64,000 nucleotides of DNA from Haliotis rubra (Eukaryota): positions 1,054,001 through 1,118,000 of the forward strand of contig NW_025767368.1 of assembly GCF_003918875.1 (NCBI RefSeq). The letters are read 5' to 3'. The translations under genes were made by a program, and so were the position numbers. Position 1 is the first letter of the stretch. Each line of letters begins with the position of its first letter. Under the pieces are notes generated by a model. That model made no database searches and had not been told where the DNA came from. It saw nothing but the letters and a program-made list of their open reading frames with translations. Positions 48,652 to 64,000 of this stretch are shown piece after piece.

Positions 48652-51014
48652 GATTTCTGCTTGTGACATTGCTACTATTGCTGTAAACTGCTGAGTGACT
48701 ACTTTCAACCTAGGATGTTTTCTAGATTTCTTTAAAATAAAGGACAGAATCAAATGTGACATTGTCGCCTTCGAATGTCCAGTGTATAACATGACCATTC
48801 TATTTTGATAAATATCTGGAACCCATTGGACTCCAAAGCTCGAGACACAACCATCTCCATTGCTCAGATCTCTAACTTTGCACACAATGCTTCTTCCCTG
48901 TTGTTTGTTTTGATACATGTATATAAATGTGAAAAAGTCGTTTTTCCCAACCAGACCCCACATCAGGTTATGTCAGCCCATTATAGGTCATGTGTCCTGT
49001 TCCAGGTCATCACACCATCTACCAGTAGTACAGTTCAATCTTATAATGTAACAGGAAGTTTGCCACAATGGCCACGATAATTTGTATCTGGAGCTTAGTC
49101 TTGTATCAGGAATCCTATATTCCAGTATGGTGTTATATTAGTAGCTGTGTTTACGTATATATAGACCAGTTATCACTACAAGCGTGCCACCTTGGTACAA
49201 CTGATTGCTATTGTCGGATAGCATAGCTTGACGAGTCATCTTGAGATTTCCCTCGACCCTGTTATTTCTATTGCGAAGACGCTATTGTTGGAATGTGATT
49301 ATAATGCTTAAACAAATATGAGTCAAAGTAAGAAGTTTATATGTATATTTCAATTATCAACTTACACTCGCATCAAAGCTCATATCGAGGTTATATCCCA
49401 GTGGTTGGTGTAAATCCAGGTGGCTTGGTCGATCACGACTAGTGGAAATATATTAATGAAATTTTGAATAAAATTAAACAATGTCGTACAAGCATAAGTC
49501 AATATATGGGAGAAACATTTATTTACAACAAGCATGTTAAATGACACGAGTAGATTAACACAGATCACATGATACCCGACCCTTGATTCAACATCAAGGG
49601 TGATGCCCGGTGATGAATTGCAAAACGTTACGTCGTACATCATAAAGTGTGGTTAGTGTCCGGTAAGGGAGACACAATACTGTGTATTTTACACAGTTGG
49701 TAATAGAAAGTCACTGTCCCGATCCGGAAGCCGAATTTCCGGTTAAATGAGGGATTTTATGTTTATTTCGAGTCACGTAAATGCGAGGTTTCCAGATATC
49801 AGGGGGCCGTATAAGCGAGGTTCCACTGTATTCCTTTCTAATAGCAACGCTGGGTTTATACTCAGCTTTGTAAATCTTTGATAAATTGTCTCATAAATTC
49901 ACAAGTGTGTAGTGCAGTGAAATGCTAACTCATCTATATTGTAATAACTTATCGATGAAACAAAAATCTGGCCATCCTCCTGCAACCACGACAAGAGTAT
50001 TTTACGTGAGCTTCAATTACTTCTCGTATCAAAGATGTAACAGTAGGCTGAGAGGGAAATGACCTTGTACAGCACAGCGACATGAGATTCCCCCTCCTTC
50101 ATATCCATCTATATTCCTGCTGTCTGTAAATTGTGTATGGGCAAGGCGCACAGGTCGTGACATCATGAGCAATGCCGGGTGTCAGGCTTACATTCAAATC
50201 GCCTGATTATGCATAGGAACCGTCCCATCTCATCAATCGGCTGTATGGACTTGTCACTGCGTCACATGGCCATTTAACACCATGCGGACAAGTAAAATGC
50301 TAAGACATTTATTGTAAAATACTATTTGGTACAAATGCTATCTACAGTACTTTGGGTATCTCAAACTCCTATTTTGATGAGGGTATTTATATTCTCTCTC
50401 TCTCTCTATCTCTTTCTCCCCCGATTCGCTTGATATACCAATGTAAATATGACTATCCCAATAAACAATTGAGTAGTATAATTTAGTTCAGCCACCTTAT
50501 ACCCCCTCTTATATGATGGAATGCGGAGCCATTAATTACACTGTCAGAGTAAACAATGTTTGTGACGTTGATACTGATTTAATTGCTCTGGTCTGATCGC
50601 CTCTGAAACAATACAATACAAACATGGGTTATCTGAACCTGAGTCAGTTTGGAACAGCCATTTTGTATAGTAGCTCACTAGATGTATCCAAATGAGTCCT
50701 GTGGCTCTAGGTGAGAGGAGAACCGGGACTGATACAGCTGGTAGTCCTACCACAATTGGTGAAGTAAACGAGCATGAGATTTGTTCACACAGATCAATAA
50801 TCATGGCCGTGCCATATGGGGAATTCAAACCCAGGACCAACAGATCCTGGTACAGCAGTAAGGGACGCAACTGTGCACTGCAAATTGCGACGCTGGGACG
50901 CCCGTATGTTCTCCATAGGACTGATCGTTGAACACACACCACTGTAATGAAATCCACAAGAATAATCTCCCCGATGAAGCACCATATTTGGGTCACATGG
51001 ATAATTTGAAAACA

Positions 51015-54000
51015 TCACAACATGTCCGGGAAGGAACATGAAGGTAATTCGTCTGTTTGCATGGAACTTAGCTCCCCTGTGAACACAAGGTCACGGGTCT
51101 CCCCTCCACCGTCTAGGTCTGGTTTGTCTGGCAACGACCCCATGCCGGACAACATCACTGACCGCGACCCTTGCCCGGGCAACTGTGATTCTTGCTCGAA
51201 GTCAGGCCTTCCAGGTAACCGTGTCGTCTGTTCGTACGCAGGTTGCCCTGGCAACTGTGCGTGCTCTCTTTGAAGCCGCCTCACTTTCTGTTTCTCATTT
51301 TTCCACCATATTTTCAACCTAGCCGGGGTAATTTTGGGTCTTTCCTGGCGTGTATGACCTTTGTTGAGTTCGTTTGCATAAAACCGTAATTTCTCGGCAG
51401 AAGGTGTCTTGCAGGATTTAAACCACGTCTTCAGAAGAGGAATCTCCAGATCGGGATGAAACGTCAACCGAGTGTCCTTTGGGACACCCTTCGTGTCCAG
51501 GGATGGGAAATCTGTAAATACACACAACAATCCGACAAAGGAACATTGATAGTACAACCAGTGTGTATTGATTTCCGAAAGTATGTGTTCCTAAGAAAAG
51601 CAAGATTAATGGATGTCAACTTATGTATTGTGAATAATTTGCATTCCACTTCTTAATGCCCTTCAAAGATTTGAGCGTGTATTCCGTTGGATAATTGAGA
51701 CTGGTTATTCTCTTCCATTGACGTATAATATATTTACTTGATCTGAGTCGAATCTTCTGTTGCCTGTCGTAACCTAATAGCATTTTTGAATTGGGTAAGC
51801 TACAAAAAGTGTTTTGCCACAGACGTTTTTACCGCCCCTAACTGCATTGCAAAAAAGAAAAGATTTCCTAAACGCCCTTTTCTCATTAGCAGCAGGAGCT
51901 CTGTACTTCTACACAGAAGACATAATTCAAAATTACCATATTGTTTTCAGTTTCAACAAAGTTTGTCAATGCGCTTTCCTGTGCCTTGATTTGGATTGCC
52001 TGGTTTATTAACATGCCACTGAGGTGTTGGCTCCTCCACTGAGATGTTCGGCTACTACACTAAGGTGTTGGCTACTACACTAAGGTGTTGGCTACTACAC
52101 CGAGATGTTTAGGCTACTACATGCAGGTGTTGGCTGCGACACACCAATGTGTTGGCTACTACACTGAGGTGTTGGCTCCTCCACTGAGGTGTTCGGCTAC
52201 TACGCAGGCTGAGGTGTTGAGCTACTACACCAAGGTGTTCAGCTACTACACCAAGGTGTTCAGCTACTACACTGAGGTGTTGGCTACTACACCAAGGTTT
52301 TCGGCTACAACACCAAGGTGTTGGCTACTACACCGAGGTGTTGGACTACTACACTGGGTGTTCTTGCTACTATGCTGAGGTGTTGGCTACTACACCGAGA
52401 TGTTCAGCTACTACACCAAGGTGTTCAGCTTACTACACCAAGGTGTTCAGCTACTACACTGAGGTGTTGGCTACTACACCAAGGTTTTCGGCTACAACAC
52501 CAAGGTGTTGGCTACTACACTGGAGGTGTTGGCTCCTCCACTGAGGGTGTTCGGCTACTATGCTGAGGTGTTGGCTACTACACGGAGAGATGTTCAACTA
52601 CTACACCAAGGTTTTCAGCTACTACACCAAGGTGTTCGGCTACTACACCGAGGTGTTGGCTACTACACCGAGGTGTTGGCTACTACACGGAGGTGTTTGG
52701 CTACTACACCGAGGTGTTCAACTACTACACTGAGATGTTCGGCTACTACCGCGGAGGTGTTTGGCTTCTACTCAGGTGTTCAGCTACTACTTCGATGTCA
52801 GCTACTACACCGAGGTGTTTGGCTACTACACCAAGGTTGTCAGCTACTACACTGAGGTGTTGGCTACTACACTGAGGTGTTGGCTACCACACTGAGGTGT
52901 TGGCTACTACTATACGGAGGTGTTGGCTACTACACTGAGGTGTTGACTACTACACTGAGGTTGGCTACTATACGGAGGTGTTGGCTACTACACTGAGGTG
53001 TCTGCTACTACACTGAGGTGTTGACTACTACACTGAGGTGTTGGCTACTATACGGAGGTGTTGGCTACTACACTGGAGGTGTTGCTGCTACACACGGAGG
53101 TGTTGGCTACTACACTGAGGTGTTGGCTACTATACGGAGGTGTTGGCTACTACACTACATACGGAGTGGAGGTGTTGGCTACTACACTGAGGTGTTGGCT
53201 ACTACACTGAGGTGGCTACTATACGGAGGTGTTGGCTACTACACTGAGGTGTTGGCTACTACACTGAGGTGTTGACTACTACACTGAGGTGTTGGCTACT
53301 ACACTGAGGTGTTGGCTAGGTGTTGGCTACTACACTGAGGTGTTGGCTACTACTGAGGTGGTTGGCTACTACACGGAGGTGTTGGCTACTACACTTACTA
53401 CACTGAGGTGTTGGCTACTACACACGGAGGTGTTGGCTACTACACTGAGGTTGGCTACTACACGGAGGTGTTGGCTACTACACTGAGGTGTTGACTACTA
53501 CACTGAGGTGTTGACTACTACACTGAGGTGTTGGCTACTACACTGAGGTGTTGGCTACTACACTGGAGGTGTTGACTACTACACTGAGGTTGGCTACTAC
53601 ACTGAGGTGTTGACTACTACACTGAGGTTGGCTACTATACGGAGGTGTTGGCTACTACACGGAGGTGTTGCCTACTACACTGAGGTTGGCTACTATACGG
53701 AGGTGTTGGCTACTACACTGAGGTGTTGACTACTACACTGAGGTGTTGGCTACTATACGGAGGTGTTGGCTACTACACTGAGGTGTTGACTACTACACTG
53801 AGGTTGGCTACTACACGGAGGTGTTGGCTACTACACTGAGGTGTCTGCTACTACACTGAGGTGTTGCTACTACACTGACTACTACACTGAGGTGTTGGCT
53901 ACTACACTGAGGTGTTGGCTACTACACTGAGGTGTTGGCTACTACACTGAGGTGTTGGCTACTACACTGAGGTGTTGGCTACTACACTGAGGTGTCTGTT

Positions 54001-54686
54001 GGCTGCTACTACACTACACTGGAGGTGTTGGGCTACTACACTGAGGTGTCTACTACACAGGGGTGTCTACTGCACGGAGGTGTTGGCTACTACACTGAGG
54101 TGTCTGCTACTACACGGAGGTGTTGGCTACTACACTGAGGTGTCTGGCTACTACACGGAGGTGTTGGCTACTACACTGAGGTGTCTGCTACTACACTGAG
54201 GTGTTGGCTACTACACTGAGGTGTTGGCTACTACACGGAGGTGTTGGCTACTACACTGAGGTGTCTGCTACTACACTGAGGTGTTGGCTACTACACTGAG
54301 GTGTCTGCTACTACACAGAGGTGTTTGCTACTACACTGAGGTGTCTGCTACTACACAGAGAGGTGTTGGCTACTACACAGAGGTGTTTGGTTACTACACT
54401 GAGGTATTAGGTCCAGTGGGATCGGTTTCGTGTGACCTCGCGCGCTTCCGTTTAATGCTTACCTGCTGCCTGTTTCGTGTAACGCCGATACCACTCGCCG
54501 AACTCCTCACACTTGTCGCTGCTTAACTTGTTGATGTACTTGCCGTTAGCGATGTTGGATATCATTGACTGACAAAGGGGAGATAACTTCGCAAGCGTCG
54601 ATTGGTTGATTTCCTTCAAGAGCGAGAGAACAGCACAGCGCACATTATGGTCGTTCCAGTCCTTTGTCGTTTTCGGGTCAGGACCT
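51015..54686 (-). CDS. SATB/Compass(dve)-like homeobox protein, 3' exons: CUTL domain plus dve-type homeodomain; 5' exons not found
   Basis: Exon 54686-54463 (WNDHNVRCAVLSLLKEINQSTLAKLSPLCQSMISNIANGKY..KCEEFGEWYR) matches the SATB1 CUTL pattern. A phase-1 splice joins exon 51511-51015 (RLTFHPDLEIPLLKTWF..LN..RQERPKIT..LKIWWKNEKQK), which matches dve/SATB homeodomains. Confidence 0.88.
52016..54408. repeat. 20-bp minisatellite in the intron between the CUTL and homeodomain exons
   Basis: Unit GAGGTGTTGGCTACTACACT with many variants, more than 100 copies. Confidence 0.97.
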
Positions 54687-55125
54687 CTGTCAAAACAAGA
54701 AACTGCATCAACCCGCATTTGGAATAGCGGCACAGCAAGAGGCCATATTAAACGAGAACATATCACACAGTCGTGGATCAAAACAAGGGCGAGACCTTCT
54801 TAAGCAACAGTGGTTGGGTCACTGTCAAAACAAGGAGCTGTTTCAAACAATGTTTTTGCACTGTCAAAAACAAAGAACAATTCATGAAACAGTGGTTGGT
54901 ATAGGAGCAACCAAGCAGCCAACTCATTGGTGGGAGGACATACAAAATAAGGAACTTTGTCAAACAAGAGTTATCAGGAGATGGCACATTCCCCGATCTG
55001 GCGCACTTCGGCCTTATGACCCTCCATGCAAAATTCGGCGGAGAAAACAAAATGGTTGTTGGCATTTCTAAAACCATCAAAAGACACCAGTTCTTTAAAG
55101 CAAGTTTCCCAAGGAAATATTAAAT

Positions 55126-55540: not shown

Positions 55541-55708
55541 GAGTGAGTGAGTGAGTTTGGTTTAACGCCGCTTTTAGCAATATTCCAGCAATATCACGGC
55601 GGAGGGACACCAGAAATGAGCTTCACACATTGTACCCATGTGGGGAATCGAACCCGGGTCTTCGGCGTGACGAGCGAACGCTTTAACCACTAGGCTACCC
55701 TGCCGCCT
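55541..55708 (-). mobile_element. tRNA-derived SINE, family A
   Basis: Near full-length reverse-complement copy with (GAGT)n tail. Confidence 0.88.
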
Positions 55709-56548
55709 CCTGGTTACTATGGTTTTACCTGAGTCAGCATATTCAAAACAGGAACTTTTAACAGTATTTTGCCTTAGTAAGCAGTTGTCGTCGATCACTT
55801 GCACACTTGTAACATGATATACGTTAGTGTATACATCCTATATCCCTCTCCAATTGACCTTGCTTTTTGGACGAATATAGATATATTATCACATGCCATG
55901 TCAGTTACATCCTATATCCCTCTCCAACTGACCTTGCTTTTTGGACGAAATATAGATATATTATCACATGCCATGTCATTATATCCCGTGTTACCTCTTG
56001 ACCCAGTAGACAAGTTCCGTAGTGTGACACATTTTACGCCATTCCATTTTACTTGTTATGATTACATCGAAGCATGAATTATTTTGAATTTTGCAGCATG
56101 AATCGTGTTTAACAATGAATACCTTCTCTTATTTTCTTTGTCCTATATTTTCGGAAATGAACAAGGGTTTGTTCTTCAAGGTTAATACGTACCACTTGTA
56201 ACAGATGCTGTTTAGGGGGAGCGTTTGTACATCATGTGACACATGTTCAACTTAAATACCCCATATTTGCCTCCTCATATTACTATCAGTTACAAGTTAA
56301 TGATAGTCTCTCTAGGTCACATACTGACATATAAAGATCACTCTGTGGCGACACAATTCAATCTGGGGAGGCAAACCTTTGATGGGTTCGAATCCCCGTG
56401 GGTCCTTATTATGTTTCTAGGTTTGTTATCATGATCTGTATGACTTCGAACTGTTCTCCTACACAATAAACTTCACAGTGAAGTAAGCCAAGCTCACTCA
56501 CTCATAAGAGATCACATGATAGTGACGTGAATAGGAGTGGGTTTGTAA

Positions 56549-56616: not shown

Positions 56617-56773
56617 GGGGTAGCCTGGTGGTTAAAGCGTTGGCTCGTCGTGCCGAAGACCGGGTTCAATTACCCACATGGGTACAATGTGTGAAGCCCA
56701 TTTCTGGTGTCCCCGTGATATTGCTGGAATATTGCTAAAAGCGGCGTAAACCTAAACTCACTCACTCACTCAC
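56617..56773 (+). mobile_element. tRNA-derived SINE, family A
   Basis: Same head, body and (ACTC)n tail. Confidence 0.85.
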
Positions 56774-57061: not shown

Positions 57062-58050
57062 GAAATACGTTATTGTCCTCAAAGTGTTTTGAAAAAGCGT
57101 CCTTCGTTCAAAAATGGGATAATTTCAGTGTATATGAAAAGGATTTTTTTGTGTTTAATGGACATACTGGACATAACTGTCCTGTGCTGTGGTCTAATAT
57201 ATAACCTCTTTTACGCTTTTCTTTTTCCTTCAGACCCACCCACCCAATACCCCCCAAAAAATACCCCCACCCACCCCCACCCTGAAAAAGATAAAAACGA
57301 AAACAAACAAACAGAAGACAAGAAGAAAAAAACAACACAAGTCAAACAAAAGTCCTCGTCCCCCAACGGATTTAAACAGTCCGTCCTTAAAACAAAATAC
57401 AGAGATTAAGGAGGACTACATATCACAACTAATAACTCTTCTCATGAGATGATATAACATAGTGATTAAGCCCTTGTGGCGGAGATCTGCAGATGTTAAA
57501 TTAGCCGAGAATAAGATTCTCTGGCTGCAGGGAACACAGACGAGAAAGCCGTGATAAGTCTAGGACGTCCTGATTGTCGATGGGGGACTGTTGTGTCAAA
57601 GCGCAGTTTGAAATTGGCCAGCTGTATAAGGGCGGTTTGTAAATACGCACGTCTGGGTCTGCCAAAGTGAGCATGGTTTTATGGCTAATTTATCATGATT
57701 CCTGCAACATCTCTGCGGGGGACACCTGAAATGGGCTTCACACATTGTACCCGTGTGGGGAACAGAACCCGCATGTTTGATGTCACATGAAGCATCTTGT
57801 AGTCACTGACATTAACAACAATTAGTCCTAGGACACGAGCCGCCATATAGCTGGACTATTGCTGAGTGCGGCGTTAAACAACAAACCAACTAACCTAGGA
57901 CACGAACTGACGAGCCAGATCACGTAATGGCCACCCAGTCTTCTTTTGTCGACTCCGGATTGAGTATGAAAGAAGAAATGGACACGGGGGTTCATTGACG
58001 TTTACGCATGTCCACAATAATGACATGCGCAGATTGACGTAACCTATCTG

Positions 58051-62175: not shown

Positions 62176-63035
62176 GCAGAGGCTCTGTAGACCTTTAACT
62201 AACTAAACCAGTAAAGCGCCATTGTGAAATGTGTCAAGACTATTCAGAACAATATTTCCTGGAGAGGGTTTCCAGATTTAAACCGGATTTAATTGGAGTC
62301 TTCCCGGTAACATTAATCGTGGCTTTGCCATCACAATAATACTTGACATTTGAATACTAGATGCAGGGAATGGCAAGAAAATAACGCGCGATTCTCCTCG
62401 CTTATCTGCACACGCCAGAAGCTTGGCAAGGATTATGTTGGGTTAGGCGAGTCAAGCGGCCACCACGGAATAGATTAAGTGATAATTAGATTGGAACGCT
62501 GTCTGATTCACTCAGATCAAGCTTTCATCACGGATTTGATTAAAACTAATATGTCATTACACCGGCACGTTACGGAACCTAGGTCAATTTAGGGAAAGAT
62601 TGGATTAAGTTTTTGTTGCTATGGTAACGGATTACAGAACGGAGTTTCTGCTGGGAATGATTTGGTGACTAGGAGCAGAGATTAGGCGGCCAATGCCTCT
62701 CTTCAGCAGACATAGTCTACTCGAGTCAACTGGGTGCTACTTTGGTCGACGCCATCTTTGAGATCGTCTTGCCTGCGCCCTCAGCATGGCTTTTGTCGAT
62801 GTCGACACAGGTGCTGCGCACGAATTTCTAAACAGTTAAAACGGAATTTTCATGTCTCGACTAGAAAATAACTTTTACTGTCAGTCAGGATTTGTAAGAA
62901 TTTTGTCTAAAGTCAAAACAATGCCATGTGCATCAATTAGAGCCAGCGGGCTGTAGCTCACCTGGGTGTGTAGTCACCTACTCATGTCGTCCATAACAAG
63001 AAAAAACACCCAAAGCAGGAGTATAAAATATATTT

Positions 63036-63213
63036 GGGGCGATGGGATAGCCTAGTGGTTAAAGCGTTCCCTCGTCACGCCCAAGACCTGGGTTCGATTC
63101 CGCGCAAGGGTAAAATGTGTGAAGCCCATTTCTGGTGTCCCCCGTCGGGATATTGCTGGAATATTGCTATCGCTTTATTGACTACAGCGGCGTAAACCCC
63201 AACTCACTCACTC
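63036..63213 (+). mobile_element. tRNA-derived SINE, family A, with a small internal insertion
   Basis: Same head, body and tail; extra ATCGCTTTATTGACT in the tail. Confidence 0.85.
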
Positions 63214-63978: not shown

Positions 63979-64000
63979 ATACCATGGTAAGTCAGCTGTG

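What the first reader, a model, noticed from the sequence alone, without database searches (positions are those of the whole stretch)
51015..54686. Invertebrate SATB-like gene with CUTL joined directly to one dve-type homeodomain and no CUT domains
Seen: a CUTL-like exon spliced in frame to a homeodomain exon with only a short linker. The homeodomain has an insertion before helix 3 and an atypical WWKNEK in place of WFxNxR. Established: vertebrate SATB1/2 are ULD-CUTL-CUT-CUT-HD, while Drosophila dve and C. elegans DVE-1 are CMP/ULD plus two homeodomains. Inference: an intermediate or lineage-specific architecture suggesting CUTL predates the gain of CUT repeats, and a candidate chromatin organiser with altered DNA specificity. 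A ULD exon is expected upstream but was not found in the window.
Basis: partly seen in the sequence, partly recalled or inferred. Interest (0 to 1): 0.72.

Follow-up and report, generated by a model that had tools for sequence, protein, structure and literature searches.

The report
Mollusc Compass-like (Cmpl-type) CUTL-homeodomain exons
These two exons are a real, strongly conserved gene part encoding a SATB-type CUTL domain followed by one dve-type homeodomain, but this layout is the normal second output of the invertebrate Compass locus (sea-urchin Cmpl, oyster Cmp1/Cmp2), not a new architecture.

Summary
On the minus strand, a CUTL exon (54686-54463) joins in frame, across a minisatellite-filled intron, to a homeodomain exon (51511-51015). 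Pfam CUTL scores E 8e-20. The homeodomain folds as one and carries a 10-residue loop insertion and WWKNEK.

CUTL, short linker and one WWKNE homeodomain make up a standard, widely annotated protein type ("type II"). I found it in molluscs, a brachiopod, a leech, chelicerates, echinoderms and a hemichordate.

- In scallop and oyster, type II shares its N-terminus and ULD with the classical two-homeodomain dve/Compass protein, then diverges exactly at the ULD end.
- In Patella, the type II exons lie 9 kb downstream of the dve-type gene. Their acceptor is in the same phase as the window's.
- This is the sea-urchin Cmp/Cmpl arrangement. The published Cmpl-specific primer encodes AVRCTV, the start of this CUTL.
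- The oyster homeobox survey already lists adjacent Cmp1/Cmp2.

The missing ULD probably lies beyond base 64000. dN/dS of 0.03 against a related species shows a working gene.

The gene itself is ordinary. The side result is that the Cmpl-type module is not confined to ambulacrarians, contrary to the 2013 paper. The scan had not noted this before.

The parts
54463..54686 (-). Exon A: the CUTL (CUT1-like) DNA-binding domain. It starts with the third base of a codon and ends with the first base of the Asp codon that is completed in exon B.
   Evidence: Pfam CUTL E 7.7e-20. SATB1 CUTL structures 2L1P/4Q2J at E 1e-16. Splice-site sequences. The related gastropod contig L003 aligns only over 54658-54468, at 77%.
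54687..54688 (-). Acceptor AG of exon A, preceded by the tract CTTGTTTTGAC. It is in the same phase as the type II acceptors of Patella and L003.
   Evidence: The open frame upstream of it (including ATG 54718-54716) is not conserved in L003.
51512..54462 (-). Intron between the CUTL exon and the homeodomain exon (GT 54462-54461, AG 51513-51512).
   Evidence: X1 has zero depth at 51520-51570, while the DNA runs read through.
52017..54405 (.). A 20-bp minisatellite of about 119 copies that fills most of the intron.
   Evidence: Tandem Repeats Finder: score 2698, 81% matches.
51015..51511 (-). Exon B: linker, homeodomain, an 85-residue tail and the stop codon (TGA 51017-51015). This is the last coding exon.
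   Evidence: L001 from a related species is 96% identical in protein and keeps the same stop; identity drops outside the exon. dN/dS 0.03.
51270..51479 (-). Atypical homeodomain of the Compass family, type II (Cmpl-type).
   Evidence: Family HMM 3e-35. AlphaFold pLDDT 86 with homeodomain matches in the PDB. It sits in the protostome type II clade with 99/97 support.
51333..51362 (-). Ten-residue insertion KGHTRQERPK between helix 2 and helix 3.
   Evidence: Alignments. Coordinates checked. The literature describes such an insertion for CMP homeodomains (PMC3784565).
51291..51308 (-). WWKNEK in the recognition helix (W48 W49 K50 N51 E52 K53).
   Evidence: WWKNE[KR] is present in every type II relative, whereas type I homeodomains have WFKN[AH]RA.
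50500..51014 (-). 3' untranslated region of at least about 500 bases. Its real end is not determined.
   Evidence: X1 contigs cover 50500-50697 and 50725-51478. AATAAA/ATTAAA motifs lie at 50583 and 50313.

Best explanation
These two exons are the 'type II' or Compass-like (Cmpl-type) 3' module of a mollusc Compass (dve/SATB-family) locus.

Most likely they are spliced to upstream exons that lie beyond base 64000. Those exons would encode the conserved MDFHAAMETFAEAW N-terminus and the ULD, the domain that tetramerises SATB1. The product would be a ULD-CUTL-homeodomain protein of about 400-450 residues. The same upstream exons can instead be joined to a nearer set of exons that encode a degenerate CUTL and two WFKN-type homeodomains, giving the classical dve/CMP protein.

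The type II product would bind DNA through the CUTL and the K50 homeodomain, and oligomerise through the ULD. By analogy it would act as a sequence-specific regulator or insulator-type chromatin protein, like sea-urchin CMPl and vertebrate SATB1.

Shown here: the exons, their frame, the two domains, purifying selection, family membership, and the shared-ULD arrangement in other molluscs.

Inferred: that this species uses the same arrangement, and the biochemical role.
For: Domains and splice frame.

Selection: 43 synonymous against 6 non-synonymous differences from the related-species contig L001, omega 0.03, with the stop conserved.

Two protein types across bilaterians. The window's homeodomain lies in the type II clade with 99/97 support.

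Shared ULD in bivalves:
- Scallop P0013 (type II) and P0119 (type I), on contigs of the same recorded length, are identical apart from a length difference in a His/Thr/Gly repeat, up to '...ATLRIRLSS'. They then diverge.
- Oyster ULD-CUTL-HD of 401 aa is encoded without introns on roughly 2-kb run assemblies. The index lists it in 41 blocks of the collection, and three places from different runs were read.
- Its first 175 residues are about 92% identical to Saccostrea type I, after which the two diverge.

Patella locus layout: ULD exons, then type I exons, then 8.9 kb, then type II exons. The ULD donor ends in AG|gt. Both acceptors begin with one base, the same phase as the window and L003.

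Sea urchin: exons e5-6 (Cmp) are mutually exclusive with e7-9 (Cmpl), 233 residues are shared, and CMPl binds an insulator element. The Cmpl-specific qPCR primer encodes AVRCTV, the start of the type II CUTL as in Diadema P0017.

Run X1 leaves the genome at the exon B acceptor.
Against: No ULD exon was seen for this species. The 9.3 kb upstream of exon A holds none.

An in-frame ATG at 54718-54716 could start a ULD-less protein of 250 residues.

Several public models of relatives lack a ULD: Saccostrea P0005, Lingula P0019, Diadema P0017 and Nucella P0010.

In chelicerates, and in one Nucella paralogue, type II has a ULD of its own, so sharing is not universal.

The X1 run is only guessed to be RNA, and the sequence beyond its break was not shown.

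No functional data exist for any mollusc member.
Confidence: 0.75

Rival explanations
1. It is an independent, ULD-less two-exon gene. Transcription starts just upstream of exon A, translation starts at ATG 54718, and the product is a 250-residue CUTL-homeodomain protein. That protein binds DNA as a monomer, or competes with the ULD-bearing forms.
For: There is an in-frame ATG and an open frame upstream of exon A. No ULD lies in the 9.3 kb upstream. RefSeq or GenBank models of 190-260 residues without a ULD exist in Saccostrea, Pinctada, Lingula and Diadema. Sea-urchin work showed that the CMPl homeodomain alone can bind its target.
Against: The frame upstream of the acceptor is not conserved in L003 or Patella, where it is a pyrimidine tract. 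The acceptor phase matches the ULD donor. The oyster short model P0184 is a truncation of the 401-aa mRNA product. On the CUTL-HD tree, ULD-less and ULD-bearing rows mix along species lines, which points to partial models rather than a separate clade.
Confidence: 0.2
2. It is a new, lineage-specific intermediate architecture between dve and SATB.
For: Reviews describe COMPASS proteins only as CMP domain plus two homeodomains, and CUTL only in SATB.
Against: The same layout is present and annotated across several phyla. It corresponds to sea-urchin CMPl and to the adjacent oyster Cmp1/Cmp2 genes.
Confidence: 0.03
3. It is a decaying duplicate or pseudogene fragment of a Compass gene.
For: The Pfam homeodomain score is slightly under threshold. 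The intron is swollen by a minisatellite.
Against: omega is 0.03 over 164 codons, with a conserved stop and conserved splice sites. The frame is intact across the splice. There is probable transcript coverage.
Confidence: 0.02

Closest known systems
Sea-urchin COMPASS-like (CMPl), product of the Cmp/Cmpl locus (Cavalieri et al. 2013, PMC3784565)
   Same: Both have a single W48 homeodomain with a long insertion between helices 2 and 3, placed right after a domain that starts ..AVRC.. (CUTL). In both, the exons lie downstream of the two-homeodomain Cmp exons. The part of the protein encoded by this module is about 160 residues. Diadema and Ptychodera type II homeodomains join the protostome type II clade, with moderate support of 80/77.
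   Different: The ambulacrarian insertion is one or two residues longer and rich in K/R, and helix 3 reads WWKNERAK rather than WWKNEKQK. The paper states that the family is exclusive to ambulacrarians. Insulator binding has been shown only in sea urchin.
Pacific oyster Cmp1/Cmp2 (CGI_10015221 and CGI_10015220; Paps et al. 2015, PMC5322547) and oyster 401-aa ULD-CUTL-HD mRNA (P0096/P0185)
   Same: Same phylum. They are adjacent Compass-family homeobox models. The oyster type II homeodomain is 62% identical to the window's, with WWKNERQ and the same insertion.
   Different: I did not map the CGI models onto the sequences used here, so which of Cmp1 and Cmp2 is type II is inferred. The C-terminal tails are unrelated.
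Vertebrate SATB1/SATB2
   Same: The CUTL is clearly homologous, about 50% identical (E 1e-16 to PDB 2L1P and 4Q2J). Relatives of the window gene carry the same ULD-CUTL tandem.
   Different: There are no CUT domains. The homeodomain has W48 and a 10-residue insertion, whereas SATB has F48 and a one-residue insertion.
Drosophila dve / C. elegans DVE-1 / mollusc 'dve-1-like' (type I Compass)
   Same: Same family and, in molluscs, the same locus. The homeodomain has the same 10-residue insertion and K50.
   Different: Type I has two homeodomains with WFKN[AH]RA and a CUTL too degenerate for Pfam. The window unit has one WWKNEK homeodomain and a strong CUTL.

Membership tests
Compass-like / type II (ULD-CUTL-one homeodomain) | A recognisable CUTL domain within about 10-20 residues of the homeodomain | tested here: met
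   Pfam CUTL E 7.7e-20. The linker is DFPSLDTKGVP.
Compass-like / type II (ULD-CUTL-one homeodomain) | A single homeodomain with W48 and a 10-11-residue insertion between helices 2 and 3 | tested here: met
   The insertion is KGHTRQERPK. There is no second homeodomain anywhere in the 64 kb.
Compass-like / type II (ULD-CUTL-one homeodomain) | WWKNE[KR] in helix 3, and placement in the type II homeodomain clade | tested here: met
   WWKNEK at 51308-51291. The clade has 99/97 support.
Compass-like / type II (ULD-CUTL-one homeodomain) | An N-terminal ULD (Compass domain) joined to the CUTL | not testable with these tools
   There is no ULD in the window. In Patella the ULD exons lie 12.3 kb upstream of the type II CUTL exon, and the window offers only 9.3 kb. 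The acceptor phase is compatible.
Compass-like / type II (ULD-CUTL-one homeodomain) | Exons that lie downstream of the two-homeodomain Cmp exons and are mutually exclusive with them | not testable with these tools
   Seen in Patella, scallop and oyster relatives. In this genome the region lies beyond base 64000.
Vertebrate SATB | Two CUT domains between the CUTL and the homeodomain | tested here: not met
   Pfam gives no CUT hit on either exon. The intron is mostly a minisatellite.
Vertebrate SATB | A homeodomain with F48 and a one-residue insertion between helices 1 and 2 | tested here: not met
   It has W48 and a 10-residue insertion between helices 2 and 3.
COMPASS proper (dve / DVE-1, type I) | Two homeodomains of the WFKN[AH]RA type | tested here: not met
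   There is one homeodomain, with WWKNEK, and it falls outside both type I clades.

The most novel reading that the evidence does not exclude
The dual-output Compass locus described in 2013 as exclusive to ambulacrarians is instead ancestral to bilaterians. In this locus, shared N-terminal and ULD exons are spliced either to dve-type exons (two homeodomains) or to Cmpl-type exons (CUTL plus one homeodomain). It survives in molluscs, including this genome. In chelicerates it has been resolved into two genes, and no type II protein was retrieved from insects. On this view the CUTL-bearing output, not dve, is the closest invertebrate relative of the ULD-CUTL part of vertebrate SATB.
Probability: 0.6. 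Interest if true: 0.5.

Novelty: new member of a known kind. Interest (0 to 1): 0.35.

Why it matters
The gene itself adds one more mollusc member to an existing family, so it matters little.

The comparison needed to place it does correct two statements in the literature. One is that the Cmp/Cmpl locus is exclusive to ambulacrarians (PMC3784565). The other is that invertebrate COMPASS proteins are simply a CMP domain plus two homeodomains, with CUTL a SATB feature (PMC4901127, PMC10515288).

If the shared-ULD, alternative-3'-module layout is ancestral, the origin of the vertebrate chromatin organisers SATB1/2 could be tested as the insertion of CUT domains into a pre-existing ULD-CUTL-homeodomain isoform. 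It would also suggest looking for insulator-type functions, as shown for sea-urchin CMPl, in protostomes.

Tried and rejected
- I did not lay reads across both exons at once. The intron holds a 2.4-kb tandem repeat, which the tool says it turns away. I laid only 50500-52000, so the exon A to exon B joint and the exon A acceptor were not seen directly.
- Searching the CUTL exon alone among 41-131-residue proteins returned only P0002, and no spliced contig of this species.
- No protein identical to the window's product appeared in any search, so the genome seems unannotated in the collections.
- The Nucella P0018 locus is not on record.
- The JBC 2014 CUTL structure paper is not held, so DNA-contact residues of the CUTL were not checked.
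- My first tree used a mis-joined exon B, one base off. It was discarded and redone.
- Rfam found nothing in 51500-52020.
- The supplements of the sea-urchin paper hold no protein sequences. The link to CMPl therefore rests on the primer translation, the exon count, the size of the specific region and the Diadema relative.
- The word search of earlier scan notes found nothing on SATB, ULD, Compass, dve or CUTL; the notes near this place concern other features.
Full report
**What is in the sequence.** The feature lies on the minus strand. Exon A runs from 54686 to 54463. It has a good acceptor (CTTGTTTTGACAG|A) and donor (CAG|GTAAGC). It encodes 74 whole codons that Pfam recognises as the CUT1-like domain of SATB, at E 7.7e-20 and 71.5 bits against a cut-off of 25. 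It aligns to the solved human SATB1 CUTL at E 1e-16.

The intron (54462-51512) is mostly a 20-bp minisatellite of about 119 copies.

Exon B runs from 51511 to the stop at 51017-51015. The junction is phase 1 (G + AT = Asp) and gives one continuous frame (which corrects the one-base slip). After an 11-residue linker comes a homeodomain (51479-51270). It has a 10-residue insertion, KGHTRQERPK, before helix 3, and WWKNEK in the recognition helix.

Pfam's generic homeodomain model scores it just under threshold: 21.5 bits against 22.9. A family-specific HMM gives 3e-35. An AlphaFold model built on 24 relatives has pLDDT 86 and three helices, and its best PDB matches are almost all homeodomains.

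**It is a working gene part.** A run-assembly contig from a related species (L001) carries the same exon. The protein is 96% identical and the stop codon is the same. Nucleotide identity collapses just upstream of the acceptor and falls after the stop. There are 43 synonymous and 6 non-synonymous differences, so dN/dS is 0.03. The tail after the homeodomain is also constrained, at 0.05.

A second related gastropod contig (L003) has the same two-exon layout. It aligns with the window only over the CUTL coding core.

In run X1, which is only guessed to be RNA, contigs cover the 3' UTR and exon B. One 343-base contig follows the genome to 51514 and then departs. The last three bases fit both the intron end and the end of exon A. 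X1 has no depth in the intron, while DNA runs X5 and X6 read through. This is suggestive transcript support, not proof of the exon A to exon B join.

**What it is not.** Family HMMs for ULD and for this homeodomain were run without filters on all six frames of the 64 kb. They find no ULD and no second homeodomain. Neither exon has a CUT domain. Exon B ends in a conserved stop, so the product has one homeodomain.

**The family.** A full-library search with the CUTL exon, followed by a search with a full-length relative, returned two clearly different protein types.

- Type I has a ULD, a CUTL too degenerate for Pfam, and two homeodomains reading WFKNARA and WFKNHRAK. It is 650-990 residues long. 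This is classical dve/Compass, found in insects, ticks, spiders, a myriapod, molluscs, a brachiopod and a nemertean.
- Type II has a ULD, a strong CUTL, a short linker and one homeodomain reading WWKNE[KR]Q. It is 400-650 residues long. It is found in bivalves, gastropods, a brachiopod, a leech, spiders, scorpions, horseshoe crabs, sea spiders, mites, a sea urchin, a crinoid and a hemichordate.

On a homeodomain tree the window sits inside the protostome type II clade (99/97). The Diadema and Ptychodera type II domains attach next (80/77), and a sea-anemone ULD-CUTL-homeodomain protein lies outside them. Type I homeodomains 1 and 2 form separate clades.

On a CUTL-plus-homeodomain tree the window groups with Patella inside a mollusc clade. 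Rows with and without a ULD mix along species lines there, which points to incomplete gene models rather than a ULD-less subfamily.

So 'CUTL joined directly to one dve-type homeodomain', the insertion and WWKNEK are all family norms.

**Where the ULD is.** In the scallop, the type II model P0013 and the type I model P0119 lie on contigs of the same recorded length. Apart from a length difference in a His/Thr/Gly repeat, they are identical from residue 1 to the end of the ULD (...ATLRIRLSS). They then diverge, one into a true CUTL and the other into the degenerate one.

In oysters, a 401-residue ULD-CUTL-homeodomain protein is encoded without introns on roughly 2-kb assemblies. The index lists it in 41 blocks of the collection, and three places from different runs were read. 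These contigs look like assembled mRNA. Its first 175 residues match Saccostrea type I at about 92%, and the match ends at the same point.

In Patella the genomic order is as follows:

- first exon, encoding the MDFHAAMETFAEAW motif
- a small exon
- two ULD exons
- two type I exons ending in a stop
- 8.9 kb of spacer
- the type II CUTL and homeodomain exons

The last ULD exon ends with two codon bases (AG|gt). Both the type I and the type II acceptors begin with a single base. The window's acceptor and that of L003 are in the same phase. In Patella the ULD is 12.3 kb upstream of the type II CUTL exon. The window offers only 9.3 kb, so the failure to find a ULD is expected.

**Link to the known sea-urchin locus.** Cavalieri et al. 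(PMC3784565) described a Cmp/Cmpl locus. Its exons e5-6 (two homeodomains, CMP) are mutually exclusive with the downstream exons e7-9 (one homeodomain with a longer K/R-rich insertion, CMPl). The two proteins share 233 N-terminal residues. CMPl (396 aa) binds the boxB element of the sns5 insulator. They called the locus exclusive to ambulacrarians.

Four things show that CMPl is the type II protein:

- The Cmpl-specific qPCR primer, reverse-complemented, encodes AVRCTV. This is the start of the type II CUTL in the sea urchin Diadema (...DQAVRCTVVELL), and corresponds to HNVRCAVLSLL in the window.
- The CMPl-specific part is 163 residues, the size of the Diadema CUTL-homeodomain unit.
- There are three Cmpl-specific exons, as in Patella.
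- The Diadema insertion is K/R-rich and its helix 3 reads WWKNE.

The oyster homeobox survey already lists two adjacent Compass genes, Cmp1 and Cmp2. The window gene is thus a new member of a known kind.

**How it probably works.** Shown here are a CUTL domain homologous to the DNA-binding CUTL of SATB1, and a K50 homeodomain with a loop insertion that leaves the fold intact. The rest is inferred from relatives and from SATB1 and CMPl work. The exons are probably joined to ULD exons, giving an oligomerising protein with two DNA-binding domains. That protein would act as a sequence-specific regulator or insulator-type chromatin protein, made from the same locus as the dve-type factor by choice of the 3' module.

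A ULD-less product starting at ATG 54718 cannot be excluded, and I put it at about 0.2. Against it, the frame upstream of the acceptor is not conserved in L003 or Patella. The short oyster model is also a truncation of the full mRNA product.

Sharing of the ULD is not universal. Spiders have separate type I and type II genes whose ULD-containing regions are only 35-47% identical. Nucella has a type II paralogue with a ULD of its own.

**Verdict.** The claim of a novel intermediate architecture is not supported. CUTL predating CUT repeats, and a ULD lying upstream, are supported. Interest is low to moderate. The gene is ordinary, but placing it shows that the Cmpl-type module, and in molluscs the shared-ULD layout, extend well beyond ambulacrarians. 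No paper in the searchable library states this.

Noticed in passing
window 52017-54405: A 20-bp minisatellite (consensus CACTGAGGTGTTGGCTACTA, about 119 copies, 81% matches) fills most of the intron between the two exons. On the plus strand it creates long spurious ORFs.
   Followed up: partly
window 51592-51674: A roughly 80-base element in the intron is extremely high-copy in DNA runs, with summed contig depth of about 2x10^5 against about 60 for the flanks. Contigs join 51592/51593 to 51640 on opposite strands, which suggests a foldback or inverted-repeat mobile element. Rfam has no match.
   Followed up: partly
window 55577-55837 (-), 56628-56738 (+), 57599-57802 (-), 63034-63195 (+): A dispersed repeat recurs on both strands upstream of exon A. 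Its open frames share motifs such as ..GSIPH.GTMCEAHFWCP... It is probably a transposon or SINE family.
   Followed up: no
P0003/P0073 (Ptychodera) and P0004 (Anneissia): RefSeq models in a hemichordate and a crinoid string ULD, degenerate CUTL, two type I homeodomains, a third very divergent homeodomain (AWFELERQ in Ptychodera) and then the type II CUTL(-HD) into one protein. The third homeodomain has no counterpart in the protostome sequences seen here.
   Followed up: partly
P0010, P0018 (Nucella), P0174 (Babylonia): Caenogastropods have at least two type II paralogues (clade 96/94). One Nucella copy has its own divergent ULD, so in that lineage type II has become a separate gene.
   Followed up: partly
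P0001 (Nymphon striatum): A sea-spider gene model carries two tandem CUTL-homeodomain modules behind a DDE_1 transposase domain. Two further type II models exist in the same species. This is either local duplication with a transposon insertion or a merged model.
   Followed up: no
window 50697-50725 and 50773: All the laid runs of organism A (X1, X5, X6) break between 50697 and 50725 and lack 15 bases at 50773. These are probably indel polymorphisms in the 3' UTR relative to the assembled individual.
   Followed up: no
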